Positions 10,231 through 52,483 of a stretch of DNA of 64,000 nucleotides are shown in pieces (position 1 is the first letter of the stretch; each line of letters opens with the position of its first letter). The notes under the pieces were generated by a model that was given only the letters and a program-made list of their open reading frames with translations, searched no databases and was not told where the DNA came from. The position numbers were made by a program, and so were the translations under genes. Where the stretch lies: sequence record PP496440.1; one strand, written 5' to 3'.

Positions 10231-10283
10231 AGCACCATGGCACTATTCAAGCGCCGCCCACTGTCCCAATGAGGAAAGCAACC

Positions 10284-11969
10284 ATGACCAGATTGACCCT
10301 AGCAACCGTCAACGCCGAGATAGCAAAGTCCGGTGGCAAAGAAACTCTGGTCAAGGGTAAGGGCTACTTCTACTGGATAGGTGGCCGTGCCGACGCCGAT
10401 CCTCAAATCTGGACTTCCATTTACGTTGCTGCGCTAAACCAGATGACGCTGGCCCAGTGGCTGGAAGACTGGAAGCGCAATGACGACCAATACAACAAAC
10501 CTACTCCCGACAAGGAAACCCGCAAAATGGCTATCAGACACGTTCAGACCCTCGCAGCTCCTACCAAATCCGGTAAGACGGCATCTGCCAACCCAGCACT
10601 GGAAGCAGCCGAAGCTGAACTTAAAAAGGTTCAGAGCACCATTCAGGGTTTCAAAGCCCGTGGCCTGGTCCCTACTTCCCCGTGGGAAAGGAAACTCAAG
10701 GACGCTAAGGCAGCTGTGTCCGCTGCCAAGAAAAAGAAGACCACTGCTGCTCCTGCACAGGAGACTGCTTCCCCGGCTACCGACTTCGCCAAGTCGTTGA
10801 AGAAGGGCGTTCGTGTACTGGTCAATCTCGGCAACACCAAAGAGCCGTCCTACTTCCTCGGCGCCATTACCAAGAACAACGCCAGCAAGGGTTCGGTCAA
10901 CGTGCTGTTCGATGACGGCGACGTTGCAGAGGTCCGTGCGATCAAATCCAAGGTCGGTATCGTGGGCATCGCCATCGATAAGGTACGCAAGTCGGAAGTT
11001 CCTGCTGACCAGATCGACAAGTGGCTGGCCGGTGCAGCTCCAACGACTAAGACCCCTGCCAGCCCGAAAGCGGCGGGAGAGTGGACTGTCAAGTCTATTG
11101 TGGCGTGGCTGGAAAGCGCAGGCTACACCAAACCAGAACCAACCCGGCTTCCTACCCGGTTCGAAAGGAAGCTTCCGTCTGGTGCTGTGATTCAAGCAGA
11201 TGTAAATATGAAAAAGACCGTGGCCCTAACCGCCATGGGTAAAGAAGGGTATGTACATTACACAGTTGACTCCTTCGCCAAGCTCAAGAACGCAGACTCT
11301 TCGCTTGCCAAGTCGGCTGTTGTCGGCACCAAGGTAGGGAACGCATTGATCCCGCCGAAAAAGTCGGGTTCACCTAAACCGTTCAGCCCAGCGGAAGCCC
11401 GGAAGGTCATCGGTGCTATCCCCGGCTGGAAGGCATCCAACGTGAAGAACAAAGCGTCAGCCACGTTCACCAAAGATTACCCGAACGGTGTAACTGCTAC
11501 CGCATTGATCTTCCCGACTCACGTTACGTTCAATTATCCTCAAGGTGAGAACGATCACGTCGGCGACTTGTCCAAGATCCCAGCCTATATCCAACAGATC
11601 GACGAGGATCAAGCCGCACCAGTAGAAGACGGCAAAGCACTGGATGATCTGGCCAAGGCATTGAAGGGCTGGCCGAACAAGGTCCTCCCACGGGATGCTG
11701 ACGAAGACAACTTCCTGCTGCGCGGGTTTGAAGATGATGACCTTCCGGCTGATGTGGAGCCAACCGCTGACGCCATCGAAGCACATGCAATCTCGATCTT
11801 CAAGAAGATGAAAAGTGTTGACAACTTCAAGAAGAGCAAGATGTACCACGGGGATAACACTTACTCCTTCTCGGCTGGCGGCACCGTGGGCTACGTGTAC
11901 TTCGACGAAGATGGCGTTGGCATGGTCCGTGCAACCCCGTTCCAAGAGTCCACGCCGGGAAAGTCCTAA
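10284..11969 (+). CDS. Multi-module protein sharing domains with the two head proteins
   Basis: Tudor-like VLVNLG..V.FDDGD module, K/A-rich helices, C-terminal module homologous to part of 5260..7452; start set by GAGG RBS. Confidence 0.8.
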   Translation: MTRLTLATVNAEIAKSGGKETLVKGKGYFYWIGGRADADPQIWTSIYVAALNQMTLAQWLEDWKRNDDQYNKPTPDKETRKMAIRHVQTLAAPTKSGKTASANPALEAAEAELKKVQSTIQGFKARGLVPTSPWERKLKDAKAAVSAAKKKKTTAAPAQETASPATDFAKSLKKGVRVLVNLGNTKEPSYFLGAITKNNASKGSVNVLFDDGDVAEVRAIKSKVGIVGIAIDKVRKSEVPADQIDKWLAGAAPTTKTPASPKAAGEWTVKSIVAWLESAGYTKPEPTRLPTRFERKLPSGAVIQADVNMKKTVALTAMGKEGYVHYTVDSFAKLKNADSSLAKSAVVGTKVGNALIPPKKSGSPKPFSPAEARKVIGAIPGWKASNVKNKASATFTKDYPNGVTATALIFPTHVTFNYPQGENDHVGDLSKIPAYIQQIDEDQAAPVEDGKALDDLAKALKGWPNKVLPRDADEDNFLLRGFEDDDLPADVEPTADAIEAHAISIFKKMKSVDNFKKSKMYHGDNTYSFSAGGTVGYVYFDEDGVGMVRATPFQESTPGKS

Positions 11970-12082
11970 GTCCCGCTAAGGGACAGACCCAAGACGAGCT
12001 GAAAGCTTTCTGTCGACAGATAGGGTTGTGGGTTTCCGGTTCTAGCGTAGCCCCTAGGAACTATCGTATCTACGACGGGGGT

Positions 12083-12274
12083 ATGGAAGGTAATAAGAAA
12101 GTGTTGGATGTAGTTCTGGGCGATGAGTTTATGGCTAACGCTGATGGATCAGGCAACAGTTATGATCGACTCCTCGATAAACTGAATGCCCTGAGCGACA
12201 AGAAGTTCATCGTCAGTCCTTGCGCTGGGGTGTATGGAAACGTCGGTAAAGATCTGACCGGATTGTCCTACTGA
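12083..12274 (+). CDS. Small hypothetical protein (63 aa) behind a structured leader
   Basis: GGGGGT RBS-like sequence before ATG; open frame. Confidence 0.4.
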   Translation: MEGNKKVLDVVLGDEFMANADGSGNSYDRLLDKLNALSDKKFIVSPCAGVYGNVGKDLTGLSY

Positions 12275-12282
12275 GCCAGATA

Positions 12283-12423
12283 CGGTAAATGATCCATGTA
12301 TCGGAGGTACCGGGGCTAGATTCATAGCTGGTTCCGGGAGTCACCCTAAGAGGTGTAGGGTCAAAGGGTTTCACCCTCTTAGGTTTCGTCCGCGCTTTCC
12401 TTACCGATTGCGCGGACTTTTTT
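12283..12423 (+). ncRNA. Candidate small non-coding RNA
   Basis: Begins at GGTAAATGA motif, two hairpins (incl. perfect CCTAAGAGG/CCTCTTAGG stem), ends in terminator; no ORF above 12 codons on + strand. Confidence 0.35.
12388..12423 (+). terminator. Intrinsic terminator
   Basis: GTCCGCGC/GCGCGGAC stem followed by T6. Confidence 0.8.
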
Positions 12424-12450
12424 ATCTGCAAAAATATATTCGAAAATAAG

Positions 12451-12480
12451 TTGTACACAATGATGCCCACGTGCTATACT
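12451..12480 (+). promoter_or_regulatory. Sigma70-type early promoter with AT-rich UP element
   Basis: TTGTAC-N18-TATACT, TG extension, AAAAATATATTCGAAAATAAG upstream. Confidence 0.7.
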
Positions 12481-12551
12481 GGAATCACGGGGGCGTGATG
12501 CCCCACCAATACCGGCCCGAACGGCCACCACTGTCCCAAGAGGAATGCACC

Positions 12552-13046
12552 ATGCCAGCGATGAAGCCTAAGACCACCCCAAGCGAACGCGACATCCAGA
12601 TTGCGATCAGCCAACTGGAAAATTTGAAGCTGGTAGCGATGGGTGAGATGGATCCGGTATATCGCGATGATCTGCAGTCGTGGCTGGCCGACTGGTATCC
12701 AGACTTTTCGTGGAACCCTAACCAGTCAAGCGTTCAGATTCAAGCGATGGTTAACCTTCCAGAGTTCGCTGACGTCGAATTAAATCTTAACCGTCGGTAT
12801 GATGTAGACTTCTACAAGGAGTTGGCTGACGGCGTAGCAGAGTCCTGTGACTACCCACTGGTTCGCGACACGCTTAACGAGAGGGGAAGAGACTCAATCC
12901 GTAACGCTTCAAAACGCGGCATGCAGTTTCACGTATTCGTTGACGGCATCTGGCAAACAAGCTGGTACAGTTACGAGGTGGCTAAGTCTATCGAAGCCAA
13001 AGAGAAGAACGCCGCGACTTATAACTCCCAGTTCGAGATCGTTTGA
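12552..13046 (+). CDS. Hypothetical early protein
   Basis: CTGTCCCAAGAGG leader before ATG 12552. Confidence 0.75.
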   Translation: MPAMKPKTTPSERDIQIAISQLENLKLVAMGEMDPVYRDDLQSWLADWYPDFSWNPNQSSVQIQAMVNLPEFADVELNLNRRYDVDFYKELADGVAESCDYPLVRDTLNERGRDSIRNASKRGMQFHVFVDGIWQTSWYSYEVAKSIEAKEKNAATYNSQFEIV

Positions 13047-13074
13047 TCAACCCTATCCCAAAGAGGAATGCACC

Positions 13075-13548
13075 ATGACTTTCAAGTACACTCCAGACTT
13101 CGACGTTGCCAGCCGCACTTACCGTATCGAGTCTGACTTCGCTACCAAGGTGTTGACGTTCATTGAAACACTGTGGGGCCTGCCGGGCGCTGGTGGTACG
13201 CCGATCATGGAACGTTCCATTCAGATGTCCATGCAGAAGACCGAAAGCCACGAGATTCGTGTTACCAACTACTTCCAAGACAGCACGCTGCTGAAGACTG
13301 TCGTGGCCGTCCGTGCTTTCATGGACATGCGAGATGCGCCTAGCGCCGTGACCAATCACGTGTTCGTAGACGGGTTTGTCCCGAGCGAATCGTGGGGCTC
13401 AGACATCATGATGACCTTCAACTCGATCATCATGGACGCCAACAAGTGGATGCGGGTAGCCGCTGAGATTGGTGTGGATCAGAGCATCCACTTGAATGAA
13501 CTCCAGATGGACATGCAGGACAAGATGAACAAGGCCACTGGGCTCTGA
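13075..13548 (+). CDS. Hypothetical early protein
   Basis: TATCCCAAAGAGG leader before ATG 13075. Confidence 0.75.
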   Translation: MTFKYTPDFDVASRTYRIESDFATKVLTFIETLWGLPGAGGTPIMERSIQMSMQKTESHEIRVTNYFQDSTLLKTVVAVRAFMDMRDAPSAVTNHVFVDGFVPSESWGSDIMMTFNSIIMDANKWMRVAAEIGVDQSIHLNELQMDMQDKMNKATGL

Positions 13549-13607
13549 TCCACAACCGGGACCGCAAGGTCCCACTCCAACCTAATATCCCAAAGAGGAA
13601 CGCAACA

Positions 13608-14093
13608 ATGAACAAGCACAATCTCGCAACTGGCTCCCTGATCCTTCTCGTCACCGGCTTTCTGATGGCAGGTGTTGTAACTCAAGCAAGCGCCGCAATG
13701 ATCGCTCCCCCGGTCCTCCAGACGAATGGTAATGGTCCGGCACCGTCCGCCAACTTCGCCCGCAACGAAGAGATGTTCTGTAAGAAGCTGGGCCGCGTGT
13801 CGTTCACCGCCGCACAGATGCGTGACGTGGACGCAACACCGGAAGAGACCACAGCTGCGGTAGACATGATGACTACCACGCTGCGCCCAGATACCCGTGA
13901 GATGATGCGCTCCGTGGTGTCGGCAGTGTACGGGGATGCGCAGAAGCTCAAGCCGGAAGAGATATCGCTGAATTTGTTCTCTAATTGTATGGGACGCGTT
14001 GATCCCGCAACCACGTACACCCAGAACGGACGCCCACCGGTACAGCAAGCACCGACAGCGGTTTCCACTACGCCCAGACCCATCACCCATTAA
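13608..14093 (+). CDS. Exported hypothetical protein
   Basis: Signal peptide ending ASA, Cys pair, conserved leader. Confidence 0.75.
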   Translation: MNKHNLATGSLILLVTGFLMAGVVTQASAAMIAPPVLQTNGNGPAPSANFARNEEMFCKKLGRVSFTAAQMRDVDATPEETTAAVDMMTTTLRPDTREMMRSVVSAVYGDAQKLKPEEISLNLFSNCMGRVDPATTYTQNGRPPVQQAPTAVSTTPRPITH

Positions 14094-14122
14094 CTCACGC
14101 TGACCGCGTAAGGTAGACTACC

Positions 14123-14431
14123 GTGAAAGACAAAATCGCCCTCGTACTTTTTGCTGTGTATCTGATGTTCGTGCCCATCGCGCAGGCAGCAGACACCAAC
14201 GTTATCGGCACTCAATACGAAACGTGGGAGAAAGGCGTAGCCGCTTGCCTACGTACCCAGGTGGTTGGTGGGTACGGATGTGACAACGGCGATGGCGTCA
14301 AGCTGTTCTCCCAGTACGTGCAAGCGATCTTGGATAGTAACGGTAGGGAATCCTACAAGAGTCGAGTGGTCGCACTCGACTACCGAGGTGATGGCGCGAT
14401 CATCATTCATTACGTGTTCACCCGCAAGTAA
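14123..14431 (+). CDS. Exported hypothetical protein
   Basis: Signal peptide MKDKIALVLFAVYLMFVPIAQA, Cys pair. Confidence 0.7.
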   Translation: MKDKIALVLFAVYLMFVPIAQAADTNVIGTQYETWEKGVAACLRTQVVGGYGCDNGDGVKLFSQYVQAILDSNGRESYKSRVVALDYRGDGAIIIHYVFTRK

Positions 14432-14435
14432 CGTC

Positions 14436-14469
14436 AAGCCCGCCCGGATAGCCCCGAGGCGGGCTTTTT
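14436..14469 (+). terminator. Intrinsic terminator
   Basis: AAGCCCGCC/GGCGGGCTT stem plus T tract; near-identical to 28283-28312. Confidence 0.8.
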
Positions 14470-14699
14470 CGTTTCCGGCGCACCATCGATGCTGGGATAT
14501 CGGCATCGCACCGCCTGCGTGATCCTACGCGGTCGGGTACACTGCCAGTCGGGCACTGATCAACGTGGCTAAGGGCTAATTTAATCGGTAAATGATTAAC
14601 AGTCCCACCAAGAACCATCCTACCTAAATGCATCTTGCAGGTAAGCACCGCCATTAATTCAAGGGGTCTGCGGCCCCACCGTTTCGGAGCACAAACAGA

Positions 14700-15878
14700 A
14701 TGACGAAGAAGATTGGTACAGCACTGGCCGTATTGGTGTGCATGTTGACACTACAAGGTCAGGCCCATGCCGACTACGACACCAAGGCTTGCAACGTGTC
14801 GTTCACGGAAGAGCAGGAACGAATACTGGGGACTGCCCATCAGGTAGGTTCCCCGGTCAACTTCGGAGTGACTCTCCAAGCCATTGCATGGAAAGAGTCC
14901 TTTGTCGGGGACAAGGTAGTTCGCGCTAACCCAACCGACGGGCGTTACGGTTCTTACGGCATCACCCACGTGCAGCTCTCGACGGGCGCATGGATGCTAG
15001 ACCAGAAGCCCACCAAACCATTCCGAACAGGTCTTCGTAACGATCTAGTCACCGACGACAGCTATGCGCTCCAGTTCGCTGCGGCCTATCTGGTGCACAC
15101 GGAAACCATCGCCAAGAAGATCACCCGTGACGGTAACCGCCAATGGCGAGCCACGGTGGCGTCTTACAACGGTTCAGGCGCCCAAGCGCGCCGTTACGTG
15201 GAAGATGTTGCTGACAAAGTATCCTACCTTAAATCCTGTGGGTTGACCAAGACCATGAAACGAATCAGTACCCCTCTGGTTGCTTCCGATAGCACTGCCA
15301 AGAAGTCTGCCAAGCAGAAGCTGCGGGATCGACTTGCCGAGAAGCGAGCGGCCACATCCGTTGCTGAGACCAAATCCAAGCGCCCCAACACCAAGTCTCG
15401 CAAAGTGGCGGATGAACCCGTCAAGGTGAAGCGTGCCCGTGACGTACTGGCCGCCGCCGGTGCACTCCCGCGCAAGTCTCCGAAGTCAGTATTGCGTAAC
15501 GCTGACCCTCTGACCAAAGAGTACATCCAGAAGAAGACGATGGACATCTACACCCGTGCACTCAAGCGCGCCAAAGGTGATCCTACCGTAATCGCATGGG
15601 CCAAGGGGTTGGCGGTCAAGCACATCAAAGACCCACTGGATCAACAGTTCATGTTCTCAGTGCACACACTGGCGGCATGCTGTGTTGCCGGTGGGCAGAC
15701 GAAGTTTCAAGCCGATCTGGACTTCCTCAACTTGATGCTGGCAACCTATCTGAACCCGAGCGTGGCACTGGTGTTCAAGAACGGCAAATTCGACGCCGCG
15801 CTGATCAGTAAGGAAGAAGCCGCCGAGCGCATGCACAACGAAGACGGCATCAGCGTCATCTACAGCGTTATCGTATAA
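14700..15878 (+). CDS. Exported lytic transglycosylase (SLT-like) with basic linker and unknown C-terminal domain
   Basis: Signal peptide; LQAIAWKES (catalytic Glu), SYGITHVQ and VASYNGSG correspond to SLT motifs I-III. Confidence 0.75.
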   Translation: MTKKIGTALAVLVCMLTLQGQAHADYDTKACNVSFTEEQERILGTAHQVGSPVNFGVTLQAIAWKESFVGDKVVRANPTDGRYGSYGITHVQLSTGAWMLDQKPTKPFRTGLRNDLVTDDSYALQFAAAYLVHTETIAKKITRDGNRQWRATVASYNGSGAQARRYVEDVADKVSYLKSCGLTKTMKRISTPLVASDSTAKKSAKQKLRDRLAEKRAATSVAETKSKRPNTKSRKVADEPVKVKRARDVLAAAGALPRKSPKSVLRNADPLTKEYIQKKTMDIYTRALKRAKGDPTVIAWAKGLAVKHIKDPLDQQFMFSVHTLAACCVAGGQTKFQADLDFLNLMLATYLNPSVALVFKNGKFDAALISKEEAAERMHNEDGISVIYSVIV

Positions 15879-15888
15879 GGAGAGCATC

Positions 15889-16059
15889 ATGGCAAGTTCC
15901 GCTAAGAAAGACAAGTACCAAGACATTGACGTGGAACTTGCCATTCTCACCACGGTCAAGACGGTAACGACGGGGAAGCAGCTGACGGACAAAGTGCGAG
16001 AGGCGTTGCCTGACCTCTCTGCCGAACAACTCAAACGTTGCCTGAACAAGTTCTGCTGA
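15889..16059 (+). CDS. Small hypothetical protein (56 aa)
   Basis: AAGGAG RBS; read by hand. Confidence 0.6.
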   Translation: MASSAKKDKYQDIDVELAILTTVKTVTTGKQLTDKVREALPDLSAEQLKRCLNKFC

Positions 16060-16071
16060 GAATATCCTATT

Positions 16072-16344
16072 ATGACTCCTATCCCTGCTAATCAGGTAAC
16101 TGCACATTGCACGTGCAACCGTGACTGGATCTTCAGGCATACCAGCCACGCCCCAGATGGTGATCCGTTGGGCGGCAAGCTTACCTGCTACACGTGTGGG
16201 TTGACCACAAGGTTTGACTACTCCTTCCGGGAGTCAAGGCGTATAATATGGAAGCATGAGAGCCTTGGCAACGGTGTATGGCCGATACCTGATGATGTGT
16301 GGGTAGAATTGCAAAAGATGAATGCCCAGCGCGGGAAGAAGTAA
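16072..16344 (+). CDS. Small Zn-ribbon-like protein
   Basis: CTC...CYTC. Confidence 0.6.
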   Translation: MTPIPANQVTAHCTCNRDWIFRHTSHAPDGDPLGGKLTCYTCGLTTRFDYSFRESRRIIWKHESLGNGVWPIPDDVWVELQKMNAQRGKK

Positions 16345-16369
16345 CTACCCTAATCCGAGATACCCTACC

Positions 16370-17350
16370 ATGAAATACATCATCTTCGACGTGACGGTGA
16401 GCAAAGGGGTAAAGAAGAAGGTTCCTGTGATCTTCGATGAGTTCCTTGTGCACGCGGATGTCGCCCGTAAGCTTCAAGATGTATCCAAGCCGCTGAAGCT
16501 GCGCCCGGCCACGGCAGGCTTTATCGACTTCGATGTCAAGCAGACGTACGGGAAGTCTACGTCATTGGGTATCGGTATCGGCATTGATGATTGCGAGATC
16601 ATCGAGCGTATGTATCTCACCAAGGGATATCAGAGCCAGGAAATGGATGATTTGATATCCAGTCTGGTCAGCAAAGCGGAAGCGGTCGCCAGTAAGATGG
16701 TAGGTAAGGTAGCCAACGACAACGGCCCGTTGATTTGCCCGGTGTGCACGCGCCCAGACAATCGTCCGCATGAAGGTTGGCACACTATCTACAACTGCCA
16801 CTTCGACTGCATCGAAGGTTATGAAGCACTGGCGGAAGGCCAACCGCTCGCGCCACCAGCCAGCGTACCCAATCTCATGGCTGCCGCACGGCAAGCTCTT
16901 GACCAGTCCCGTGCGGCGAAGCAAGAGCCTACGCTGGCCCATGCGTTCACCCATACCTGCCAACTACCCAGCGTGGTGCCGAACGTCCAGATGGACACAC
17001 GCACCGCCAAGCCGCTGCTATTCACATGCCAGCGAGCCGTCCAGGCGCTCATTGCAGCGCGTCCGGCCAGCCCCCTATTCAAACGGGCGCACTGGCACTC
17101 CAAACAAGCCCTGATGGCTTCACAGCGCTTCACACAAGCATACCTGTTCCATGCGTACCAGCTCGCGGCGATGTCGGCGTGGGAGGATAACGCGGAGAAG
17201 ATCGAGTGCATGACCTTGATCAACTTGGTGCAGACCATGGACCCGCACAATGAATTACGTGACAAGGTTTTCACGGTAAATACTCAACATGGAACAGTGA
17301 CTACTCACTCTCTATCCCAAGCTAAATCCTTTGCTAGCAGGCAGGTTTAA
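16370..17350 (+). CDS. Multi-domain hypothetical protein
   Basis: Open frame of about 326 aa; CPVC/H/C cluster in the middle. Confidence 0.7.
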   Translation: MKYIIFDVTVSKGVKKKVPVIFDEFLVHADVARKLQDVSKPLKLRPATAGFIDFDVKQTYGKSTSLGIGIGIDDCEIIERMYLTKGYQSQEMDDLISSLVSKAEAVASKMVGKVANDNGPLICPVCTRPDNRPHEGWHTIYNCHFDCIEGYEALAEGQPLAPPASVPNLMAAARQALDQSRAAKQEPTLAHAFTHTCQLPSVVPNVQMDTRTAKPLLFTCQRAVQALIAARPASPLFKRAHWHSKQALMASQRFTQAYLFHAYQLAAMSAWEDNAEKIECMTLINLVQTMDPHNELRDKVFTVNTQHGTVTTHSLSQAKSFASRQV

Positions 17351-17351
17351 A

Positions 17352-18554: not shown

Positions 18555-18583
18555 GCATGCTTGCACAACTCCGAGGTAACACC

Positions 18584-18940: not shown

Positions 18941-18944
18941 TACC

Positions 18945-24442: not shown

Positions 24443-24456
24443 TACGGTCCGGTAAA

Positions 24457-24487
24457 TAGGGGAGTGAGCAATCGCTTCCCTATTTTT
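24457..24487 (+). terminator. Intrinsic terminator
   Basis: TAGGGGAGTGA-GCAA-TCGCTTCCCTA followed by TTTTT. Confidence 0.75.
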
Positions 24488-28351: not shown

Positions 28352-28380
28352 TTGACACTATGAAATATACCTGACATAAT
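28352..28380 (+). promoter_or_regulatory. Sigma70-type early promoter
   Basis: TTGACA-N17-CATAAT, TG extension, AT-rich UP element at 28330-28345. Confidence 0.8.
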
Positions 28381-30391: not shown

Positions 30392-30418
30392 TGCCCCGGT
30401 TTCGACTGGGGCATTTTT
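30392..30418 (+). terminator. Intrinsic terminator
   Basis: TGCCCCGGT-TTCG-ACTGGGGCA followed by TTTTT. Confidence 0.85.
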
Positions 30419-30451
30419 CTCTCAAGCCCCACTGTCCCATTGAGGTGATCC

Positions 30452-30865
30452 ATGTTCAAGCATTATGTGTCTGGTCCTAGCAGTAAAGAACCCGCCGATC
30501 TTCCCCCACATCTGGCACACTGGCATAAGCACTCCACCAAGGTGATGAGCATGCTGTGGACGGTCAAGTCAACCCCCGAGCAGATGAAGGAGCGTCGGGT
30601 AGCTCATGGGTCTATCCAGCTGACGGAACTGAAATCTCAGGAGGGTGAAGAGGTAGGAATCCATGGGTACACGTACCCTATGCCCGACCGCTACTTGATC
30701 CACATCTCTAACTGGGCGGTGTATCGCGGCAAGCACCCGAGCAATGAGATCAAGGATTGGCTGAACCCGGACCATGCCTATGAGGTGTACGAGTTCACCA
30801 CGATCAATGAGGCATTTGCCTTCCTCGCCCTTTTCACCGCCGACAAGATCTGCGTCCAACGCTGA
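30452..30865 (+). CDS. Hypothetical protein
   Basis: CTGTCCCATTGAGGTGATCC leader. Confidence 0.75.
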   Translation: MFKHYVSGPSSKEPADLPPHLAHWHKHSTKVMSMLWTVKSTPEQMKERRVAHGSIQLTELKSQEGEEVGIHGYTYPMPDRYLIHISNWAVYRGKHPSNEIKDWLNPDHAYEVYEFTTINEAFAFLALFTADKICVQR

Positions 30866-30894
30866 TCCACTCCCTGTCCCAATGAGGTGTCACC

Positions 30895-31131
30895 ATGCCA
30901 ATGTCATTCCCAGATATGCAGTCCCTGATCAACCGTGCCGAACAACGAGGCTTCCGTCGCCCGCTCAAAGCGGAAACCGAAGAGGAGTTCCGCAACGCGC
31001 TGGCAGACCATATGCTCAACATCGACCGTGTGGAATCCGCCGAGATCCGTTCGGGCAAGGGCTGGGACCAGCAAGACCAGCGCTCCATGCTGTCGGCCAT
31101 GGGAATCGATCTCAAGGATTTTGAGCTGTGA
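30895..31131 (+). CDS. Hypothetical protein
   Basis: CTGTCCCAATGAGG leader. Confidence 0.75.
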   Translation: MPMSFPDMQSLINRAEQRGFRRPLKAETEEEFRNALADHMLNIDRVESAEIRSGKGWDQQDQRSMLSAMGIDLKDFEL

Positions 31132-35795: not shown

Positions 35796-36771
35796 GACAT
35801 GGGAACAACGCCGCCGCCGAATCATGGCGGAGATCAATGCGGAGGAATCTGCCAAAGAGCAGGACCGCCAGAAGGTGACCGTCAAGCATACGAAGTGGAT
35901 GCCGCCAGCAGGTATGGTTCGGGGTAGTCTGGCCAATCATACATTGTCGCCGCAACCGTTCAATCCCCAGGCCAACGTGCACAAGCTGATCCACGTCTTG
36001 ACTCATGCCAAGGAAGAGATCAAGCGCTCGGATCGACTGGTAACCCTGTTCCTACCCGGCGACAACACGACCCGAATGCTGGAGCGGGATGCCGCACTTA
36101 CATGCCTGCGTAGCAATGAGGAAGGTTTCCCTTTCGTACGAGGTCTGGTGCACAGTACGCCCGAGTTCGAGATTGACTTCTTATCCCTTCGGCTTGACGA
36201 ATCTAGTCAGCAAGAGGCTTACGATAAAGGTGTGATCACTCCCGTATATCATCTCAGCCTAAAGGACAAGGCTAGTGTGTCGGGGTATTCGATCTACTCC
36301 GATGAGGATGTGATCACACCGTCGGTAGAGATTATCTACTGCATGGCTCGCTGTGTGTCGGCGATGTTCCGCAAGATCGTGGAACCTATCCTGACCGTGG
36401 ATATGAAAACACTGATGCTGGCTATCAATGCCTTCACTGATGAGTTCAACAGGCTGATAGCCCATCGGTACATGCAAGGCTGGGCGGCGCGCTACGAATT
36501 GAAAGGGTATGAGATAGTTATTCGACTGGTGCACGAAAAGGCGTTTAAGTCGTACACGCTTAATCTGGTGTTCGAACGGTCGGGTGTCCTGCTCCATCTG
36601 GTCACGCCCAACGACATCCTGACGGTCAACACCTACCGGTTGTTACTGGCGCTGCTCTATCCCGAGGTAAAGATGCCAGCGATCCTGCGCCGGGATCAGA
36701 CCACGGCGGGAGTCATGCCCTACTACTACTTCAACATCTTGCCCAGCGCCGGTTTCGAGCTGGATCTGTAA
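35788..36771 (+). CDS. Hypothetical protein
   Basis: GAGGTG RBS, 327 aa. Confidence 0.7.
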   Translation: MTETWEQRRRRIMAEINAEESAKEQDRQKVTVKHTKWMPPAGMVRGSLANHTLSPQPFNPQANVHKLIHVLTHAKEEIKRSDRLVTLFLPGDNTTRMLERDAALTCLRSNEEGFPFVRGLVHSTPEFEIDFLSLRLDESSQQEAYDKGVITPVYHLSLKDKASVSGYSIYSDEDVITPSVEIIYCMARCVSAMFRKIVEPILTVDMKTLMLAINAFTDEFNRLIAHRYMQGWAARYELKGYEIVIRLVHEKAFKSYTLNLVFERSGVLLHLVTPNDILTVNTYRLLLALLYPEVKMPAILRRDQTTAGVMPYYYFNILPSAGFELDL

Positions 36772-36817
36772 ATAACCAGCAGCAAGCTTACACACCTACC
36801 GAATAAGGATCAGACAG

Positions 36818-40590: not shown

Positions 40591-40594
40591 TCTC

Positions 40595-44095: not shown

Positions 44096-44096
44096 T

Positions 44097-44986: not shown

Positions 44987-44988
44987 CC

Positions 44989-45519: not shown

Positions 45520-45521
45520 CC

Positions 45522-47061: not shown

Positions 47062-47087
47062 GCCCTGATCCACCGCAGCGACAAAGG

Positions 47088-47135
47088 AACCCCGTGTAAA
47101 ACTATCTGTCAAATGGTAGTTGCACGGGGTTTTTT
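47088..47135 (+). terminator. Long-stem terminator overlapping the -35 of the next promoter
   Basis: AACCCCGTGTAA/TTGCACGGGGTT stem followed by TTTT. Confidence 0.7.
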
Positions 47136-47148
47136 CGTGTGCTATAAT
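47120..47148 (+). promoter_or_regulatory. Sigma70-type early promoter
   Basis: TTGCAC-N17-TATAAT, TG extension; duplicate of 10201 promoter including downstream GCACCATGGCAC. Confidence 0.8.
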
Positions 47149-47215
47149 GGCACCATGGCACCAGCCATGCCCGGAAACATTGAGCTTCCGGCCACTGTCC
47201 CAAGAGGAACGCACC

Positions 47216-47704
47216 ATGATCAATCAAGACTTGCAAGTAACTGGCACCACTCCAGCCGTGGACGGGTATCAGGTTGAAGTGAACGACACTAAGCACGGTT
47301 TCCGCTTTCGTCTGCGCCACATCCCTACTGACCGGGTAACTCACTGGGCAGGTTACCAGAGCATAGTCATGCTGGACGACATCGCCGCGACCACCGGCTA
47401 TTATGGCGGCGCCGGCGAAGATCTGGTCCCCCGTTCCGCTGCAGACATCCTGCGTCAGTTCGCTGTGCAAGACGTCACCATCAAGTTTGGCGATGAGTTC
47501 ACCGAAGCAGGTGATGCGGTAGCCGACGCCAAGGTAGCTTTGCTGGACACTGACGAAGTTGAGGAGATGCAGCAGTCGTTCACCGACTCACTGGCAGACG
47601 CCCTTCGTGGTTCCGGTGACTTGCTGGAGAACATGTCTGACGACGACTTCGCCGCTGGCATGAAGGCTTTCGACGCAGCTACTCCGCTGACGAAGAAGAA
47701 CTGA
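47216..47704 (+). CDS. Hypothetical early protein, acidic C-terminus
   Basis: CTGTCCCAAGAGG leader. Confidence 0.75.
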   Translation: MINQDLQVTGTTPAVDGYQVEVNDTKHGFRFRLRHIPTDRVTHWAGYQSIVMLDDIAATTGYYGGAGEDLVPRSAADILRQFAVQDVTIKFGDEFTEAGDAVADAKVALLDTDEVEEMQQSFTDSLADALRGSGDLLENMSDDDFAAGMKAFDAATPLTKKN

Positions 47705-47748
47705 TAACCACGGGGATCGCAAGGTCCCCGACCCTGAGAGGGTGTATC

Positions 47749-48108
47749 ATGAAGCCTGAGTATTGCGACTACTGCGATCTAGACACCAGCTCGGAGGAAC
47801 TCGAGACCGTTGTGGATGGCAAACACACTGTCTTCCCCGTGACGGGTAGCAAGAGCAAACAGTTCCCGGATGCACAGCCCGTTGAAGTTGTCGCCGGTCT
47901 GGAACTTTCGTACCGCAACTGGTCGATCATCCGCAATAGCAGAAATGACGTATGGGAGATATTTCATCCGGATACGCCAGACAGTACTGAAGATGAGTAT
48001 CCACGTGTCTGGGACTGCATGCGTTGCATAGACAAAGAGATTGAAGACGGTCGCCATCTTGGCGATGCCATCACCCCCGAAACTGAAGACTGCGTACTCC
48101 GAGCCTAA
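47749..48108 (+). CDS. Hypothetical acidic protein
   Basis: GAGGG RBS, CxxC. Confidence 0.7.
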   Translation: MKPEYCDYCDLDTSSEELETVVDGKHTVFPVTGSKSKQFPDAQPVEVVAGLELSYRNWSIIRNSRNDVWEIFHPDTPDSTEDEYPRVWDCMRCIDKEIEDGRHLGDAITPETEDCVLRA

Positions 48109-48152
48109 GCTACTGCTTGAGAGTCCGCCCCTACCCCGAAGAGGATTGCATC

Positions 48153-49307
48153 ATGGCCCGAGTCAATACCGCCCGCTACGCTTCCCAACTCCAGAATCTG
48201 GAAGGCGTCACTATTAAGATCGTTCCATTGGGCGAAGCAGGGGATAAAGCCCCCGTCAGTCCGATGATGGACGCGTACTTCTGGACCCGCAAGCTTCCAG
48301 ACAACGCCACGCTGCGCCAGTTGATCAACCGCATTCGTACTTCGTCTGGTCACGTCAAACAAGGCGACGAAGCACAAGGGGCACCGGGCAACGTCTTGTT
48401 GGTCGGTAAGCATACATGCCAGCTGCAGGTGTTCACGGCCAAAGGTTCGCCGTTGACCAAGAAAGAGATGTCGGTCGCCACTATCACCATGGGCCAGTTA
48501 CGCAAGCAGGCACCAGCCAAGGTCGTTCGTAAGGATCACGTTGCTTCGGCCAAAGGATCGATGGAACAGATAAAGAAAGACGATCCAGAGCTGTATGCAG
48601 CAGCGACCGGCAAGACGTTCGATCCGACCAAAGCCCAGACGGCAGCGAAAGCTTCGACGATGGACGCCATCACCGGCATGCTCGCCCAGTTCTCTAACAA
48701 GCCCCGCAAGGGTGAGAAGAAAGCTGACACACTGCCGACCGACCCCAAAGAAGCCGTGCAGTTCCTTCTACAGCACTGGCACAACACCGGTGGCCCGAAA
48801 GAGGTTAGCACCACGGTGTCGAAGGAAGGCGCCCAGTTTGTCGATGACATGTACAACAGCTCGTATCCAGAGATGATGCAGGACGTAGGCCACCCGCCTA
48901 CTGAATACCTTCTCAAGTTCTGGGAAGTGAACCGCTACCGCTTCGGCATCGGCCACCCGGTTAAGATTCCACCCGCTGATCTGCCGGTAAAGTCCACGAT
49001 GACGGGTAAGGTGTTGTGGCTGGGTGGTAAGCAGAAGAGCGTGATCAAGAAAGTCGTATCGCGTCAGCTACCGGGTCGTCCAGAGGGTGAGCGTACCGAG
49101 TTCGCCATTACGGTGTCGGGTGAAGAGGTGCAAACCCGTCATCTGATCAAGCACAAGGGCGACTCGTACCAGATCAATGACTTGGCAATCATCTCGGATG
49201 GCATCCTCCGTCCTGAGACGTCAACGGTCACCCCGAAGCCCGGCCCGACCAAACCGAAGAAGCCAGCACTGGAAGTCAAAGCCAAGAAGAAAGGTAAGAC
49301 GAAATGA
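48153..49307 (+). CDS. Basic hypothetical protein
   Basis: GAGG RBS, Lys-rich. Confidence 0.8.
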   Translation: MARVNTARYASQLQNLEGVTIKIVPLGEAGDKAPVSPMMDAYFWTRKLPDNATLRQLINRIRTSSGHVKQGDEAQGAPGNVLLVGKHTCQLQVFTAKGSPLTKKEMSVATITMGQLRKQAPAKVVRKDHVASAKGSMEQIKKDDPELYAAATGKTFDPTKAQTAAKASTMDAITGMLAQFSNKPRKGEKKADTLPTDPKEAVQFLLQHWHNTGGPKEVSTTVSKEGAQFVDDMYNSSYPEMMQDVGHPPTEYLLKFWEVNRYRFGIGHPVKIPPADLPVKSTMTGKVLWLGGKQKSVIKKVVSRQLPGRPEGERTEFAITVSGEEVQTRHLIKHKGDSYQINDLAIISDGILRPETSTVTPKPGPTKPKKPALEVKAKKKGKTK

Positions 49308-49549
49308 GTCGGTTCAAGATGATGTACGGTAACGTCAAGGTGTGGGGCATGTTCATTCTGGCTATCCTCCTTGCCGTGATCGCCGCCGTCATATGGCTGA
49401 TTGGTGCCGGTATGGTGCTCGTAGGACGCGCAGGCCGGGTTTTGCAGCGCATCGGTGCCGGGAGTTGGGGCGCGAGCGCTAATGCCAGTGAGCACAGCCT
49501 CAGCATATACAACCGCATCCGGCCTAAGAAGCCTAACGACCCGTCTTGA
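49304..49549 (+). CDS. Small membrane protein
   Basis: Long hydrophobic segment, ATGA overlap. Confidence 0.6.
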   Translation: MSRFKMMYGNVKVWGMFILAILLAVIAAVIWLIGAGMVLVGRAGRVLQRIGAGSWGASANASEHSLSIYNRIRPKKPNDPS

Positions 49550-49607
49550 CCCCATCCACTAAGACACCGGTAAATGAGCCGGTGTCCTACCGCTTACCGA
49601 GGTAACC

Positions 49608-49931
49608 ATGAGTACGCCAGACACTGACCAAACCACTGCGGATGTCGAGGCAGTTGTTGTTCGACTTGAACGTGGGAATGATAAAGACGGAAACCCCGTT
49701 CATTACTTCCTGACGTACCGAGGCAAGGATGTTCCGATGGGTGAACGTGAGGTTCGTACCACGGCCAACATCAAGCACGCCTTCCGCTTCAACACGGAAG
49801 ATGAGGCAGTCGCTGCCACGCAGTCGGAAGGCTTCCAGCAGTTGGTAGCCAAGATCAACCGGTCCGGCCCCGGTGTCACCAACGTGACAACGCCGAAGAT
49901 GAGCATTCGTTACGCTCTGCTTCCTGAATAA
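49608..49931 (+). CDS. Hypothetical protein
   Basis: GAGGT RBS. Confidence 0.7.
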   Translation: MSTPDTDQTTADVEAVVVRLERGNDKDGNPVHYFLTYRGKDVPMGEREVRTTANIKHAFRFNTEDEAVAATQSEGFQQLVAKINRSGPGVTNVTTPKMSIRYALLPE

Positions 49932-49981
49932 CCAAACCCAATCTCAATAGCAACATCTAAAGTCCCGATAGGAGTTACACC

Positions 49982-51637
49982 ATGACCGTTCCAGCACGAT
50001 TCGCAGCAGCAGAAGCAAAACTTTACGTCGGCAACAAGGCTGACAACATCCGCATCCAGCTGAAAGGCAACGTTGCCTTGATTCAAGGCTGGAAGGACGA
50101 CAAGGAAGATACCGAAGTTGCCCGCGAGGAATTCAAGACCGCCAAGGATTTGACTGACCTGATCAAGTCGGCCCGCAACGAAGTCAATGCCCCCGACGGC
50201 CAGATTCGTGTGGTCAGTGACGACGCCAGCATCATCGTCATCGATCTGGGTACTGAAGCGGAAGAGATCCGTAGCTTCGGCAAGTCTGGAGCCAAGCTGT
50301 TGGACGCTCTGATCACGCTGGCTAAAGCGGAAGAAATCGAAGGTGAAGCGGCTCGCGGTCAACTGGCAGATAAATTGGCCGAAGCGTTGGCTAAGCCTGA
50401 GTCGGACCAAGGTGAAACCGCTGTGGAAACCGTAGCAGGCAAGCTGACCACTGCACCGGCCACTGGCACTGACCTTGTCGGAACTCCGCTCAACTCCCCG
50501 GTACAAGGCGCGGGTATCGATCTGAAGCAGGAAGCTGACGCACAGGGCGACGAACTCGGTTTGGTCGAAACCATGGAAGAGCAATTCCAGCACCCCGGTC
50601 TGGTGCATCGCTTCGGCTTCCCGGCTGGCATCACTCTGGGTGGCGCCGTGGATGTGACCCTGCCAGATGGTAGCGTTACCGAGCACTACACTTTCTCTGA
50701 CATGGACGGTGACCCCGCCGACGACAGCGCTGAAGGTACCGTGGTCGTCGAAGTGCGTACCTACGCCACGGATGCAGACGAGGAAGCGGAAGACGATCGC
50801 ATCTCGCTGGAACTGCCGACCCTCACCGCGATCAATCGTCTGCTCAACCTGATCGAGACGTACGGCGACGAACTGAAATTCAACATGGTGTCTGTGCTGA
50901 CACTGGACGTGCCCGCTCTGGAACTGGAATATCGCTACACCCCCGAGAAGGGCAAGCTGACCAGCAAGATCCGTGTCGAGTTCGCCGAGGCATTCATCGC
51001 AGACCTTAGTGCCATCGCGGTGCCGACGTACACCCCGTTCGATCTGCGTATGCACGGCGAGTTCAGCTACGAAGACTTCGCCCACGTAACCAGCAACTAC
51101 GCAGCCTCGTTGAGCGCTCGCTGCCGCAACTCTTCCCCGGCGTCTGTCCTGACTGGCAAGATCGAACTTATCGGCTGGGCCAGCCTCACGGATGATGCAG
51201 GGGAGTCTTCTACCCTGATGTTCGACGGTGCATCCGCCAGCAACTCCCAAGGCGATGAAGTGACCATGCAGGTAGCAGTGGCCCAACTGCTCGCCGCCGA
51301 CAAGATCACGTTCTTCCCCGACACCCGCTTGATGAAGATCGCCAAAGCGTCCACCGCCAAGGACAAGTCTTTCGGCCCGGAAGCACTTACAGGTATGGCG
51401 GTCAAGCTTAACGGCAAGGATGAAGGAATCATCTACACCACCAAAGGCTTGGGCACCCTGCTCAACAACTTCCATCAGACCCAAGTGGCCGCAGTCACCG
51501 AGGAAGTGAAGAAGGTGAACGAGCTGGTTGATACCGAACTCAGCATCGTCTTGAGCGAGCTGATGGTTGATCTGCCGCAGGACGTCCCTGAGAAGAAGAT
51601 CAAGTCGGTCCAAACCAAGCCTCGCATCATTAAGTAA
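49982..51637 (+). CDS. Large acidic hypothetical protein
   Basis: AGGAG RBS, strongly C-ending codons. Confidence 0.85.
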   Translation: MTVPARFAAAEAKLYVGNKADNIRIQLKGNVALIQGWKDDKEDTEVAREEFKTAKDLTDLIKSARNEVNAPDGQIRVVSDDASIIVIDLGTEAEEIRSFGKSGAKLLDALITLAKAEEIEGEAARGQLADKLAEALAKPESDQGETAVETVAGKLTTAPATGTDLVGTPLNSPVQGAGIDLKQEADAQGDELGLVETMEEQFQHPGLVHRFGFPAGITLGGAVDVTLPDGSVTEHYTFSDMDGDPADDSAEGTVVVEVRTYATDADEEAEDDRISLELPTLTAINRLLNLIETYGDELKFNMVSVLTLDVPALELEYRYTPEKGKLTSKIRVEFAEAFIADLSAIAVPTYTPFDLRMHGEFSYEDFAHVTSNYAASLSARCRNSSPASVLTGKIELIGWASLTDDAGESSTLMFDGASASNSQGDEVTMQVAVAQLLAADKITFFPDTRLMKIAKASTAKDKSFGPEALTGMAVKLNGKDEGIIYTTKGLGTLLNNFHQTQVAAVTEEVKKVNELVDTELSIVLSELMVDLPQDVPEKKIKSVQTKPRIIK

Positions 51638-51659
51638 TTCAAGCAAGGACAATCAGGCC

Positions 51660-52448
51660 ATGGATGGCACTCACGGACAACGCAGGGTTAGTAAAATGAA
51701 GGTTTCTACGAAACGACGTATTCTCTACTGGGCACCATCGGTACTGGTTCTGCTGGCGTCAATGTCACTGGTCGGTCTCGCTGCCCACGCCAACACCGCG
51801 CGAGCTGATGAGATGGCGCCACCTATGAACTCTGAAGTTCACCGGGCAGCAATGTCGGTACAAGCGGCGCAGGGGTTCAATGGTAATGCCAGCCCACTGA
51901 CGCTGGATCGCCAGGCCTATCCGTCGGACGTCAAAGCCAAGATGGACGAAGTGATGCGTCAGTGTCCAGTGGACGGCTCGCTGAAACAGGTGCGACTGTT
52001 CCGCTATTCGGAAGGTGAAGTCCCCTCCCCGAGTATGTTCGACGCCATCTGTAGTTTGCTGGTTCTGCCACCCGACGTGTACCACAAGACTGATCCGATG
52101 AAGTGGCGCAAGTTCACGCAGAAGGTTACCCCGGTCAGCGCCGAGATCCTGATCGAAGTGGATTCGAGCAAGCCTCAGGATGAGAAGGCGCGCTTCCTGT
52201 TTCAGCAGGTGCTGAACAATCCCGACTGGTTCCAACTGGTCGAAGTGAAAACCATGAAGGTGAAGGGCACTGCGCTGGAGCGTACGGTGATCTTCCAGAT
52301 CCAGCAATCGGTAGGTGTGTATTACGACATGCTGGCGGCGTACGTTAGCCAACAAGGTAAGCCTGTCGTCGAACCCATCCCGACTATCCAGAGCGGGAGC
52401 CGCAGCACGGACAACCGACCCATCACCATGTTGACCGAACAGAAGTAA
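51660..52448 (+). CDS. Exported hypothetical protein (start could be 51696)
   Basis: Signal peptide ending ARA, Cys pair. Confidence 0.7.
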   Translation: MDGTHGQRRVSKMKVSTKRRILYWAPSVLVLLASMSLVGLAAHANTARADEMAPPMNSEVHRAAMSVQAAQGFNGNASPLTLDRQAYPSDVKAKMDEVMRQCPVDGSLKQVRLFRYSEGEVPSPSMFDAICSLLVLPPDVYHKTDPMKWRKFTQKVTPVSAEILIEVDSSKPQDEKARFLFQQVLNNPDWFQLVEVKTMKVKGTALERTVIFQIQQSVGVYYDMLAAYVSQQGKPVVEPIPTIQSGSRSTDNRPITMLTEQK

Positions 52449-52483
52449 CCTGAAACACCCACTGTCCCAATGAGGTATCTACC

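What the first reader, a model, noticed from the sequence alone, without database searches (positions are those of the whole stretch)
10258..52475. Conserved CCACTGTCCCAA(T)GAGG leader fused to the RBS of eight or more accessory genes
Copies lie at 10258-10274, 12528-12543, 30429-30445, 30872-30887, 47192-47207 and 52459-52475. TATCCCAAAGAGG variants lie at 13051-13066 and 13585-13598, and a weaker variant at 48129-48144. All are directly 5' of the Shine-Dalgarno of mostly small unknown genes in early clusters. I did not see it before the replication or nucleotide enzymes. CTGTCCC is not anti-SD complementary, so it needs another explanation. Inference: either a phage translational enhancer or operator bound by a phage or host factor, or a recombination handle that makes these genes exchangeable cassettes.
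Basis: partly seen in the sequence, partly recalled or inferred. Interest (0 to 1): 0.65.

Follow-up and report, generated by a model that had tools for sequence, protein, structure and literature searches.

The report
Start-codon tag on phage early genes
A Pseudomonas putida jumbo phage puts the same short sequence directly in front of the ribosome-binding site of about 16 unrelated small genes read from host-type early promoters; this resembles the still unexplained "start-associated sequences" of mycobacteriophages, and here it sits in a host where it could be tested genetically.

Summary
The window is the first 64 kb of phage vB_PpuM-KoPa-5 (201 kb). The motif is a 26-29 nt translation-initiation block: a 12-nt 5' half (consensus CCACTGTCCCAA; invariant T and CCC), 0-1 nt, GAGG, a 6-10 nt spacer, then the start codon. 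There are 9 strong copies in the window and 16 in the genome. All are in the sense orientation directly before start codons of unrelated hypothetical genes, and none lies elsewhere. The block is private to the nine phages of this genus and is at chance level in a P. putida chromosome. It goes with sigma70-type promoters (odds ratio 42). Replication genes instead lie behind a different motif, GGTAAAT(A/G). Within the genus the non-SD core never varies while neighbouring positions do (p=0.004). I found no pairing partner in rRNA or in the phage, and no RegA, RegB, CsrA, CSD or ProQ homologue.

Best reading: an mRNA-level, SAS-like tag marking early-gene translation start sites, probably read by an unidentified factor. 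Recombination between blocks is real at two loci, but blocks are not breakpoint hotspots, so that looks like a by-product. No expression data were available, so the mechanism is inferred.

The parts
10258..10286 (+). Block copy 1 (12-nt 5' half, SD, spacer, ATG of gene 10); first gene behind a sigma70-type promoter
12528..12554 (+). Block copy 2 (gene 11); first gene behind a sigma70-type promoter
13050..13077 (+). Block copy 3 (gene 12); intercistronic, starts 4 nt after the stop of gene 11; the right breakpoint of a 186-nt deletion in SKa-4, Aura and Amme-1 lies at 13046
13582..13610 (+). Block copy 4 (gene 13); follows a GNRA-loop hairpin at 13558-13573
30429..30454 (+). Block copy 5 (gene 31); follows the terminator-like hairpin at 30393-30418; its SD extends to full anti-SD complementarity
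30871..30897 (+). Block copy 6 (gene 32); intercistronic
47192..47218 (+). Block copy 7 (gene 58); first gene behind a sigma70-type promoter; duplicated as a 26-nt direct repeat around an extra gene in Peetri and SKa-4
48128..48155 (+). Block copy 8 (gene 60), CCCCTACCCCGA variant; crossover partner in the loss of gene 59 in SKa-4 and Aura
52459..52486 (+). Block copy 9; points to a GTG start at 52484 for gene 65 (annotated ATG 52529)
49957..49984 (+). Degenerate copy (gene 63), PWM 6.9 bits, SD is TAGGAG
60106..60132 (+). Degenerate copy; points to a GTG start at 60130 for gene 78 (annotated ATG 60151)
10201..10230 (+). sigma70-type promoter (TTGCAC-N18-TATAAT with extended TG) driving gene 10; preceded by a terminator at 10130-10162
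12451..12480 (+). sigma70-type promoter driving genes 11-13
28352..28380 (+). sigma70-type promoter driving gene 30 (degenerate block-like start site) and, by read-through, genes 31-32
47120..47148 (+). sigma70-type promoter driving gene 58 and the genes after it

Best explanation
The block is a start-associated RNA element. It is a genus-private 12-nt sequence (invariant T and CCC within CCACTRYCCCRA) fused to an ordinary-strength Shine-Dalgarno, and it tags the translation start sites of the phage's early genes, the ones transcribed by host RNA polymerase.

Shown: it lies in 5' UTRs and intercistronic gaps, always in the sense orientation, at fixed distance from the start codon. It precedes unrelated genes, goes with sigma70-type promoters, is absent from the host, and its non-SD core is under purifying selection.

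Inferred: it acts on the mRNA at translation initiation, as the recognition site of a sequence-specific factor. That factor is most likely a phage-encoded protein of an unknown family, and it would give early messages class-specific control: either preferential initiation right after infection or coordinated shut-off later, which is the logic of T4 RegA and RegB. Because the copies are near-identical and the phage has a UvsX-type recombination system, the copies also occasionally recombine, adding or removing the genes between them. I treat that as a side effect.
For: Position and orientation: 14 of 14 near-consensus sites lie 6-10 nt before a same-strand start, with none elsewhere. Start sites score at least 9 bits in a leave-one-out PWM 15 times more often than random windows.

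Transcribed: 7 copies lie 45-71 nt downstream of sigma70-type -10 boxes; the others are intercistronic within the same units.

Class link: 7 of 11 promoter-proximal genes carry the block against 9 of 227 others (odds ratio 42, p=4e-7). Replication and nucleotide genes instead follow GGTAAAT(A/G) at variable distance.

Not a result of gene duplication: the 16 proteins are unrelated ORFans, and the linker between promoter and block is not conserved.

Selection: across six genomes 0 of 36 T+CCC columns and 0 of 36 GAGG columns vary, against 39 of 234 other start-site columns (p=0.004 and 2e-5).

Phage-specific: 2 hits in a 6.6-Mb P. putida chromosome (reversed-pattern control 1) against 9-11 per 0.2-Mb phage genome. 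Only the nine phages of this genus carry it among 50,697 phage records.

The SD half behaves as an SD: it is of average strength (-6.6 against -6.5 kcal/mol), and degenerate copies keep anti-SD pairing through different sequences.

Start sites with the block are somewhat less structured (P unpaired 0.58 against 0.50, p=0.012).
Against: There is no expression, ribosome-profiling or 5'-end data, because no sequencing run was listed. Any effect on translation is therefore untested.

No candidate factor was found: RegA, RegB, CsrA, CSD and ProQ families are all absent.

The relatives are 96-98% identical, so the selection test rests on few substitutions.

A DNA-level reading cannot be excluded from sequence alone.

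Sequence identity among copies could be partly maintained by gene conversion rather than by recognition.
Confidence: 0.42

Rival explanations
1. A factor-independent translational enhancer or standby site. In this reading the C/A-rich, G-poor 5' half simply keeps the SD region single-stranded, or binds ribosomal protein S1, and so gives strong initiation on early messages without any phage factor.
For: Start sites with the block are less structured (MFE -16.9 against -21.4 kcal/mol, p=0.008; SD-to-AUG unpaired probability 0.58 against 0.50, p=0.012). The 5' half is rich in pyrimidines. A Felix O1-like phage has a repeated start site of similar layout, C/A-rich then TCCTAA then SD then AAT.
Against: An unstructured spacer would not need invariant T and CCC positions, nor variation restricted to transitions. 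The host itself does not use the sequence. The accessibility gain is small.
Confidence: 0.24
2. A DNA-level operator of the 'stoperator' type. A phage DNA-binding protein would bind the asymmetric site inside early transcription units and block elongating host RNA polymerase, shutting early transcription off.
For: The site is asymmetric, has multiple copies, is always oriented with transcription, lies downstream of the early promoters and between early genes, and is phage-private. These are the same formal properties as the L5 stoperators mentioned in PMC3203893.
Against: The 5' half is joined to the SD with only 0-1 nt of play in every copy, and the whole element sits at a fixed distance from the start codon. 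A roadblock site has no need for that. There is no palindromic or half-site structure.
Confidence: 0.12
3. Primarily a recombination handle: a portable homology patch whose selected function is to let ORFan cassettes be inserted, deleted and swapped, as proposed for PeSLs.
For: In Peetri and SKa-4 an unrelated 111-aa gene is flanked by a 26-nt direct repeat of the block where KoPa-5 has a single copy. Gene 59 is missing in SKa-4 and Aura, and the two genomes have different crossover points between the same two blocks. A deletion in gene 11 ends 4 nt before a block.
Against: Breakpoints are about 7-fold enriched at start sites in general (25 of 69 against 4.9% expected). Block-type start sites are hit no more often than ordinary ones (3 of 9 against 15 of 51, odds ratio 1.2, p=1.0). 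Most block-bearing genes (12, 13, 31, 32, 60, 65) are conserved in all genomes examined. This reading does not explain the fusion to the SD or the link to one promoter class.
Confidence: 0.08
4. Neutral copy-and-paste. One start-site version would have spread by gene conversion or by co-insertion with new genes, with no function beyond carrying an SD.
For: Some copies are identical through the spacer. The phage encodes a UvsX-like recombinase. Block-to-block exchange is documented.
Against: Three subfamilies differ in SD flank and spacer yet keep the same 5' half. Between orthologues the core never changes while the spacer and linker do. The association with one promoter class is strong.
Confidence: 0.08
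5. A promoter for the phage's own sigma factor, giving near-leaderless mRNAs. The GAGG would then be a promoter element rather than an SD.
For: The phage encodes a sigma factor that matches only region 2. The distance from GAGG to the start (6-10 nt) would also fit a -10-to-start-site distance.
Against: A better candidate for that sigma exists: GGTAAAT(A/G), which resembles the T4 late promoter, upstream of 25 genes. Degenerate copies replace GAGG with other anti-SD-complementary words. The GC-rich 5' half is a poor melting element. Copies already sit behind sigma70 promoters.
Confidence: 0.05

Closest known systems
Start-associated sequences (SAS) of Cluster K mycobacteriophages (Pope et al. 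2011, PMC3203893; still unexplained in 2025, PMC12699233)
   Same: Both are short asymmetric repeats with about 10-20 copies per genome, in one orientation, a few nt from start codons. Both contain the SD core plus conserved positions that cannot pair with 16S rRNA. Both occur before non-structural genes of different families, mostly with ATG starts, and are essentially absent from the host genome.
   Different: There is no sequence similarity to GGGATAGGAGCCC. Here the extra conserved part lies 5' of the SD rather than flanking it. No ESAS-type inverted repeats were found. The host is a Gram-negative bacterium and the phage is a virulent 201-kb myovirus. Here there is an explicit tie to sigma70-type promoters.
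PeSL cassettes of T4-type phages (Arbiol et al. 2010, PMC2839356; Comeau et al. 2014, PMC4122927) and the 26-bp SAS-like repeat of Felix O1-like phage Mordin (PMC4611695)
   Same: Seven copies sit at the 3' end of modules made of a terminator hairpin, an AT-rich stretch, a sigma70 promoter, a UTR, the SD and the start codon, in front of ORFans. Copies recombine with one another and add or remove genes. Mordin's repeat has a similar layout (C/A-rich, TCCTAA, SD, AAT).
   Different: In PeSLs and in Mordin the whole cassette of about 100 nt is homologous, with the stem-loop placed within the promoter. Here only the start-site block (and separately the promoter) is conserved, and the linker is not. 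Nine of 16 copies have no promoter of their own.
T4 RegA translational operators and RegB cleavage of early-mRNA SD sequences
   Same: The logic is the same: a shared feature of early-gene ribosome-binding sites that allows class-wide post-transcriptional control.
   Different: The phage has no RegA or RegB homologue. RegA sites are AU-rich and overlap the AUG. RegB needs only GGAG in context.
Stoperators of Cluster A mycobacteriophages (L5)
   Same: Both are asymmetric sites of about 13 bp, with many copies, oriented with transcription inside transcription units.
   Different: Stoperators act on DNA and are not fused to the SD at fixed spacing.
Epsilon-type translational enhancers (T7 gene 10 leader) that pair with 16S rRNA
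   Same: Both are sequences just 5' of the SD on phage messages.
   Different: There is no complementarity to 16S or to the rest of the rrn operon beyond shuffled or permuted controls.

Membership tests
SAS-like start-associated sequence (phenomenological class) | Short asymmetric repeat, about 10-20 copies per genome, in one orientation | tested here: met
   16 strong copies, all in the sense orientation
SAS-like start-associated sequence (phenomenological class) | Located within a few nt of start codons and containing the SD core | tested here: met
   GAGG ends 6-10 nt before the start in 14 of 14 sites; its SD pairing energy is typical
SAS-like start-associated sequence (phenomenological class) | Conserved positions that cannot pair with the 16S rRNA 3' end | tested here: met
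   The 5' half shows no complementarity beyond controls
SAS-like start-associated sequence (phenomenological class) | Restricted to non-structural genes of unrelated families | tested here: met
16 of 16 are hypothetical proteins with no paralogy among them.
SAS-like start-associated sequence (phenomenological class) | Essentially absent from the host genome | tested here: met
   2 hits in 6.6 Mb, reversed-pattern control 1
Cluster K SAS family proper | Match to the consensus GGGATAGGAGCCC (up to 2 mismatches) and associated ESAS inverted repeats | tested here: not met
   The sequence is different. The test for an upstream hairpin or inverted repeat was only marginal (p=0.055).
PeSL | Strong sigma70-like early promoter within the repeat | tested here: inconclusive
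   Present upstream of 7 of 16 copies, but separated from the block by a non-conserved linker; 9 copies have none
PeSL | Stem-loop or terminator as part of the conserved cassette | tested here: inconclusive
   Terminators precede the promoters, but their sequences are not conserved
PeSL | Copies are preferred sites of indel or replacement | tested here: not met
   Two loci show block-to-block recombination, but there is no enrichment over other start sites (odds ratio 1.2, p=1.0)
RegA operator / RegB target | Cognate RegA (PF01818) or RegB (PF10715) protein encoded by the phage | tested here: not met
   No match at E<=1 in the six-frame search of the whole record
Stoperator | Bound by a phage repressor on DNA; position independent of the SD | not testable with these tools
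   Binding cannot be tested here; the fixed fusion to the SD argues against it
rRNA-pairing enhancer (epsilon type) | Complementarity to 16S rRNA outside the anti-SD | tested here: not met
   The best duplexes differ from variant to variant and do not beat shuffled sequences. The wobble-tolerant scan gave a maximum of 9 of 12 paired positions, the same as permuted controls.

The most novel reading that the evidence does not exclude
The block would be the RNA operator of a new, sequence-specific translational regulator encoded by the phage, with the logic of RegA or RegB but an unrelated fold. This regulator would define an early-gene post-transcriptional regulon. SAS-like tags in mycobacteriophages, Felix O1-like phages and this jumbo phage would then be convergent versions of one general strategy: labelling a temporal class of messages at the ribosome-binding site.
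Probability: 0.3. Interest if true: 0.7.

Novelty: new variant of a known kind. Interest (0 to 1): 0.45.

Why it matters
Start-associated sequences have been known since 2011 and, according to a 2025 survey of 188 genomes, still have no demonstrated function. This element has the same formal properties but occurs in a virulent phage of P. putida KT2440, a fast-growing host with good genetics. It also comes with a clear hypothesis about temporal class: host-type promoters go with the block, and GGTAAAT(A/G) promoters go with ordinary start sites. Simple reporter and pull-down experiments could therefore settle what such tags do.

On the practical side, the block corrects at least two gene starts. 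It identifies the probable immediate-early gene set of a new phage genus. If it proves to be an enhancer or an infection-responsive operator, it would be a compact expression part for P. putida.

Tried and rejected
- Pairing with 16S rRNA: the best duplexes differ between variants and are no better than shuffled sequences.
- A wobble-tolerant RNA partner anywhere in the host rrn operon or on either phage strand: no better than column-permuted controls. No antisense copy exists other than the blocks themselves.
- Known RNA families: none in the window.
- tRNA link: none.
- Phage-encoded RegA, RegB, CsrA, cold-shock domain or ProQ/FinO: none.
- Host usage of the motif: chance level.
- Occurrence in other phages: IMG/VR gave 55 single-copy hits, as expected by chance, with no multi-copy contig. 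GenBank phages gave only the nine phages of this genus.
- Nearest outgroup, Vibrio phage GR7B: no SD-fused block in the syntenic 50 kb, only a promoter-like word at variable distance from the SD.
- A conserved hairpin immediately 5' of the block: marginal (p=0.055).
- Elevated conservation of the block region as a whole compared with its flanks: uninformative, because the genomes are 96-98% identical everywhere.
- Paralogy of the downstream genes: none.
- An upstream small ORF running from the conserved transcript start into the block: the reading frame is not consistent between copies (my reading).
- Public RNA or DNA sequencing runs: none was listed.
Full report
IDENTITY OF THE DNA. The window is identical to bases 1-64000 of Pseudomonas phage vB_PpuM-KoPa-5 (PP496440.1, 201,088 bp). 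This is a virulent jumbo myovirus of P. putida KT2440/PaW85. Eight close relatives form a new genus-level cluster, G3 of the CEPEST collection. The paper describing them says nothing about promoters or motifs. I assembled the whole genome from five annotated stretches. I also took the syntenic 50 kb from five relatives: Peetri, Pori-4, SKa-4, Amme-1 and Aura.

THE OBSERVATION. It is real. The 17-mer with up to 3 mismatches occurs 8 times in the window against 0.73 expected, and no shuffle reached 8. The weaker copy at 48128 is also there.

- Aligning the copies shows that the conserved unit is the whole translation-initiation region, 26-29 nt long. It has a 12-nt 5' half (consensus CCACTGTCCCAA, more generally CCACTRYCCCRA), 0-1 nt, GAGG, a 6-10 nt spacer that often ends in CACC, and the start codon.
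- Genome-wide there are 16 strong copies, 9 of them in the window. About six more are degenerate.
- Every one of the 14 distinct sites within 3 mismatches of the 5' half plus SD lies 6-10 nt upstream of a same-strand start codon. None lies elsewhere on either strand.
- In an unbiased k-mer comparison of all 238 upstream regions, pieces of the 5' half are the most enriched words that are not SD sequences. An annotation-free version of the scan also recovers them as top hits.
- The 5' half carries about 12.7 bits. Each strong copy still scores 9.5-19.3 bits when left out of the model. Start sites reach 9 bits 15 times more often than random windows.

WHAT IT IS ATTACHED TO. All 16 downstream genes are annotated hypothetical. 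The ten window genes tested have no informative Pfam or PHROG assignment. The 16 proteins are not paralogues of each other. The block therefore did not spread by gene duplication.

Seven copies belong to the first gene behind a module made of a terminator hairpin, an AT-rich stretch and a sigma70-type promoter (TTGaCA-like, 16-18 nt, TATAAT-like, often with an extended TG). In these the -10 box ends 45-71 nt before the start codon. With one uniform promoter definition, 7 of 11 promoter-proximal genes carry the block against 9 of 227 others (odds ratio 42, p=4e-7). Those nine lie further down the same units or just behind hairpins. Promoters of the same type share their first transcribed bases, but the linker between promoter and block differs in sequence and length. 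Promoter and block are therefore separate conserved modules.

A second recurrent motif, GGTAAAT(A/G), stands 19-105 nt upstream of 25 genes, where 1.8 were expected for the 7-mer. These include the clamp loader, SSB, primase, Holliday-junction resolvase, a helicase, the topoisomerase operon and the Que genes. It resembles the T4 late promoter. The phage's sigma factor matches only sigma70 region 2. My inference is that the genome has a host-polymerase early class, which carries the block, and a phage-directed class, which has ordinary start sites.

SPECIFICITY. A complete P. putida chromosome has 2 matches to the core pattern in 6.6 Mb, with 1 for the reversed control. Each of the four phage genomes searched has 9-11 in 0.2 Mb. 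Among 50,697 GenBank phage records, only the nine phages of this genus match a full copy. IMG/VR gave only single-copy hits, as expected by chance. The nearest outgroup is Vibrio phage GR7B, whose terminase is 50% identical. It has no SD-fused block in the syntenic region, only a promoter-like word at variable distance from the SD.

SELECTION. The relatives are 96-98% identical throughout, so average identity says nothing. Column by column across nine orthologous sites in up to six genomes, the picture is clearer:

- The T, the CCC and the GAGG never vary: 0 of 72 columns.
- The R and Y positions, the linker, the spacer and the flanks do vary: 39 of 234 columns.
- This gives p=2e-5 for the whole core and p=0.004 for T+CCC alone.
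- The positions that vary between orthologues are the same ones that vary between copies within a genome.
- Three subfamilies differ in SD flank and spacer but keep the same 5' half.

HOW IT MIGHT WORK. The GAGG part behaves as a normal SD. Its pairing energy with the host anti-SD is -6.6 kcal/mol, against -6.5 for other phage genes and -3.5 for random sequence. Degenerate copies keep complementarity through different words.

The 5' half does not pair with 16S rRNA beyond shuffled controls. A wobble-tolerant scan was prompted by the transition-only variability, and it found no partner in the whole rrn operon or in phage transcripts. There is no antisense copy and no Rfam family. Block start sites are modestly less structured. 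The phage has no RegA, RegB, CsrA, cold-shock domain or ProQ homologue.

The strict fusion to the SD, the sense-only orientation and the fixed spacing favour an RNA-level role in initiation. The invariant, sequence-specific core and its absence from the host favour recognition by a dedicated factor over a mere unstructured leader. That step is inference. No RNA-seq run was listed for this phage.

THE RECOMBINATION IDEA. Homology breakpoints between KoPa-5 and five relatives are about 7-fold enriched in start-site windows in general (25 of 69 against 4.9% expected). Block-type start sites are hit no more often than others (3 of 9 against 15 of 51, odds ratio 1.2, p=1.0). Clean cases do exist.

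- In Peetri and SKa-4 an unrelated 111-aa gene lies between two copies of the block, behind the promoter that drives gene 58 in KoPa-5. The alignment overlap of 26 nt is the direct repeat.
- Gene 59 is absent from SKa-4 and Aura. In both, its upstream hairpin is joined to gene 60 through a block, but SKa-4 keeps the gene 59-type spacer and Aura the gene 60-type spacer. So there were two different crossovers between the same pair of blocks.

The block is therefore a usable homology patch, as in the PeSL model, but this looks like a consequence of repetition rather than its purpose.

COMPARISON WITH WHAT IS KNOWN. The closest class is the start-associated sequences of Cluster K mycobacteriophages. 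Those are 13-bp asymmetric repeats, 11-19 per genome, 3-7 bp from starts of non-structural genes. They contain the SD plus positions that cannot pair with rRNA, are absent from the host, and have no known function. A 2025 survey still calls for functional tests.

A genome announcement reports a 26-bp SAS-like repeat in the Felix O1-like phage Mordin. In the record, these repeats are the 3' ends of fully homologous PeSL-type cassettes.

PeSLs of T4-type phages combine a sigma70 promoter, a stem-loop, the SD and the start codon before ORFans, and they mediate shuffling.

The present element shares the phenomenology of SAS and the promoter context of PeSLs. It is not homologous to either, it is a free-standing module, and it occurs in a new phage lineage. 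I class it as a new variant of a known kind.

LIMITS. The temporal class, the translation-level action and the existence of a factor are all inferred from sequence. The promoter calls are consensus matches. The selection test rests on few substitutions. The scan's earlier notes on this window did not bear on the motif itself.

Noticed in passing
window 36768-36774, 24452-24458, 49570-49576, 55699-55705, 14588-14594, 17276-17282 and others; genome-wide upstream of 25 genes: GGTAAAT(A/G), which resembles the T4 late promoter TATAAATA, recurs 19-105 nt upstream of replication, recombination and Que genes (18 genes against 1.8 expected for the 7-mer). It is a candidate promoter for the phage's sigma factor, which matches only region 2.
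   Followed up: partly
window 52484 vs 52529: Gene 65 (KoPa5_00065) probably starts at GTG 52484, directly behind a perfect block, not at the annotated ATG 52529. The relatives carry the same annotation.
   Followed up: partly
window 60130 vs 60151: Gene 78 probably starts at GTG 60130, behind a degenerate block with a TAGGAG SD, not at the annotated ATG 60151.
   Followed up: partly
window 11950-12377: A KoPa-5-specific insert of 330-430 nt between gene 10 and the gene 11 promoter is replaced by 3-51 nt in relatives. It contains an unannotated ORF (12026-12274 in the ORF list).
   Followed up: no
L006 (Peetri) about 49370-49730: An unannotated homologue of KoPa-5 gene 59 with a GTG start, behind a block-type start site.
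   Followed up: partly
window 10171-10196: Pori-4, SKa-4 and Amme-1 carry a 1.25-kb insertion here, just upstream of the gene 10 promoter. It encodes a 403-aa protein with a stretch about 69% identical at the DNA level to part of gene 10. Gene 10 itself is internally hypervariable between relatives.
   Followed up: partly
window 10231-10245 and 47149-47163; genome about 175590: Three sigma70-type promoters share the first transcribed bases GCACCATGG, which places an ATG about where transcription should start. In two cases the resulting short ORF ends at a stop codon inside the block, but the frame is not consistent in the third.
   Followed up: partly
genome starts 16370, 83460(-), 89256(-), 152272(-), 153016(-), 195818: There is a second start-site type in which the word CCCTACC or CCTACC fills the spacer between the SD and the ATG. 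So the same C-rich word can lie on either side of the SD.
   Followed up: no
window 8051-8131: ARAGORN calls a tRNA-Gly (GCC) inside the CDS 7500-9149. It is probably a false positive.
   Followed up: no
window 13558-13573, 47712-47729, 7465-7482: Short GC hairpins with GNRA loops (GGGACC-GCAA-GGTCCC type) recur in intercistronic gaps, two of them just 5' of start sites.
   Followed up: no
L189 (Vibrio phage GR7B) 1-50000, minus strand: A word of the form CCGATTATGT recurs about 17-30 nt upstream of at least 10 start codons, at variable distance from the SD. It is likely a phage promoter -10 region.
   Followed up: no
L188 (Citrobacter phage Mordin) 3689-4237 and 8685-15232: The arm of Mordin that carries the nine SAS-like repeats also encodes a protein annotated as similar to the T4 endoribonuclease RegB. 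That is a possible factor-target pairing worth testing in that phage.
   Followed up: no
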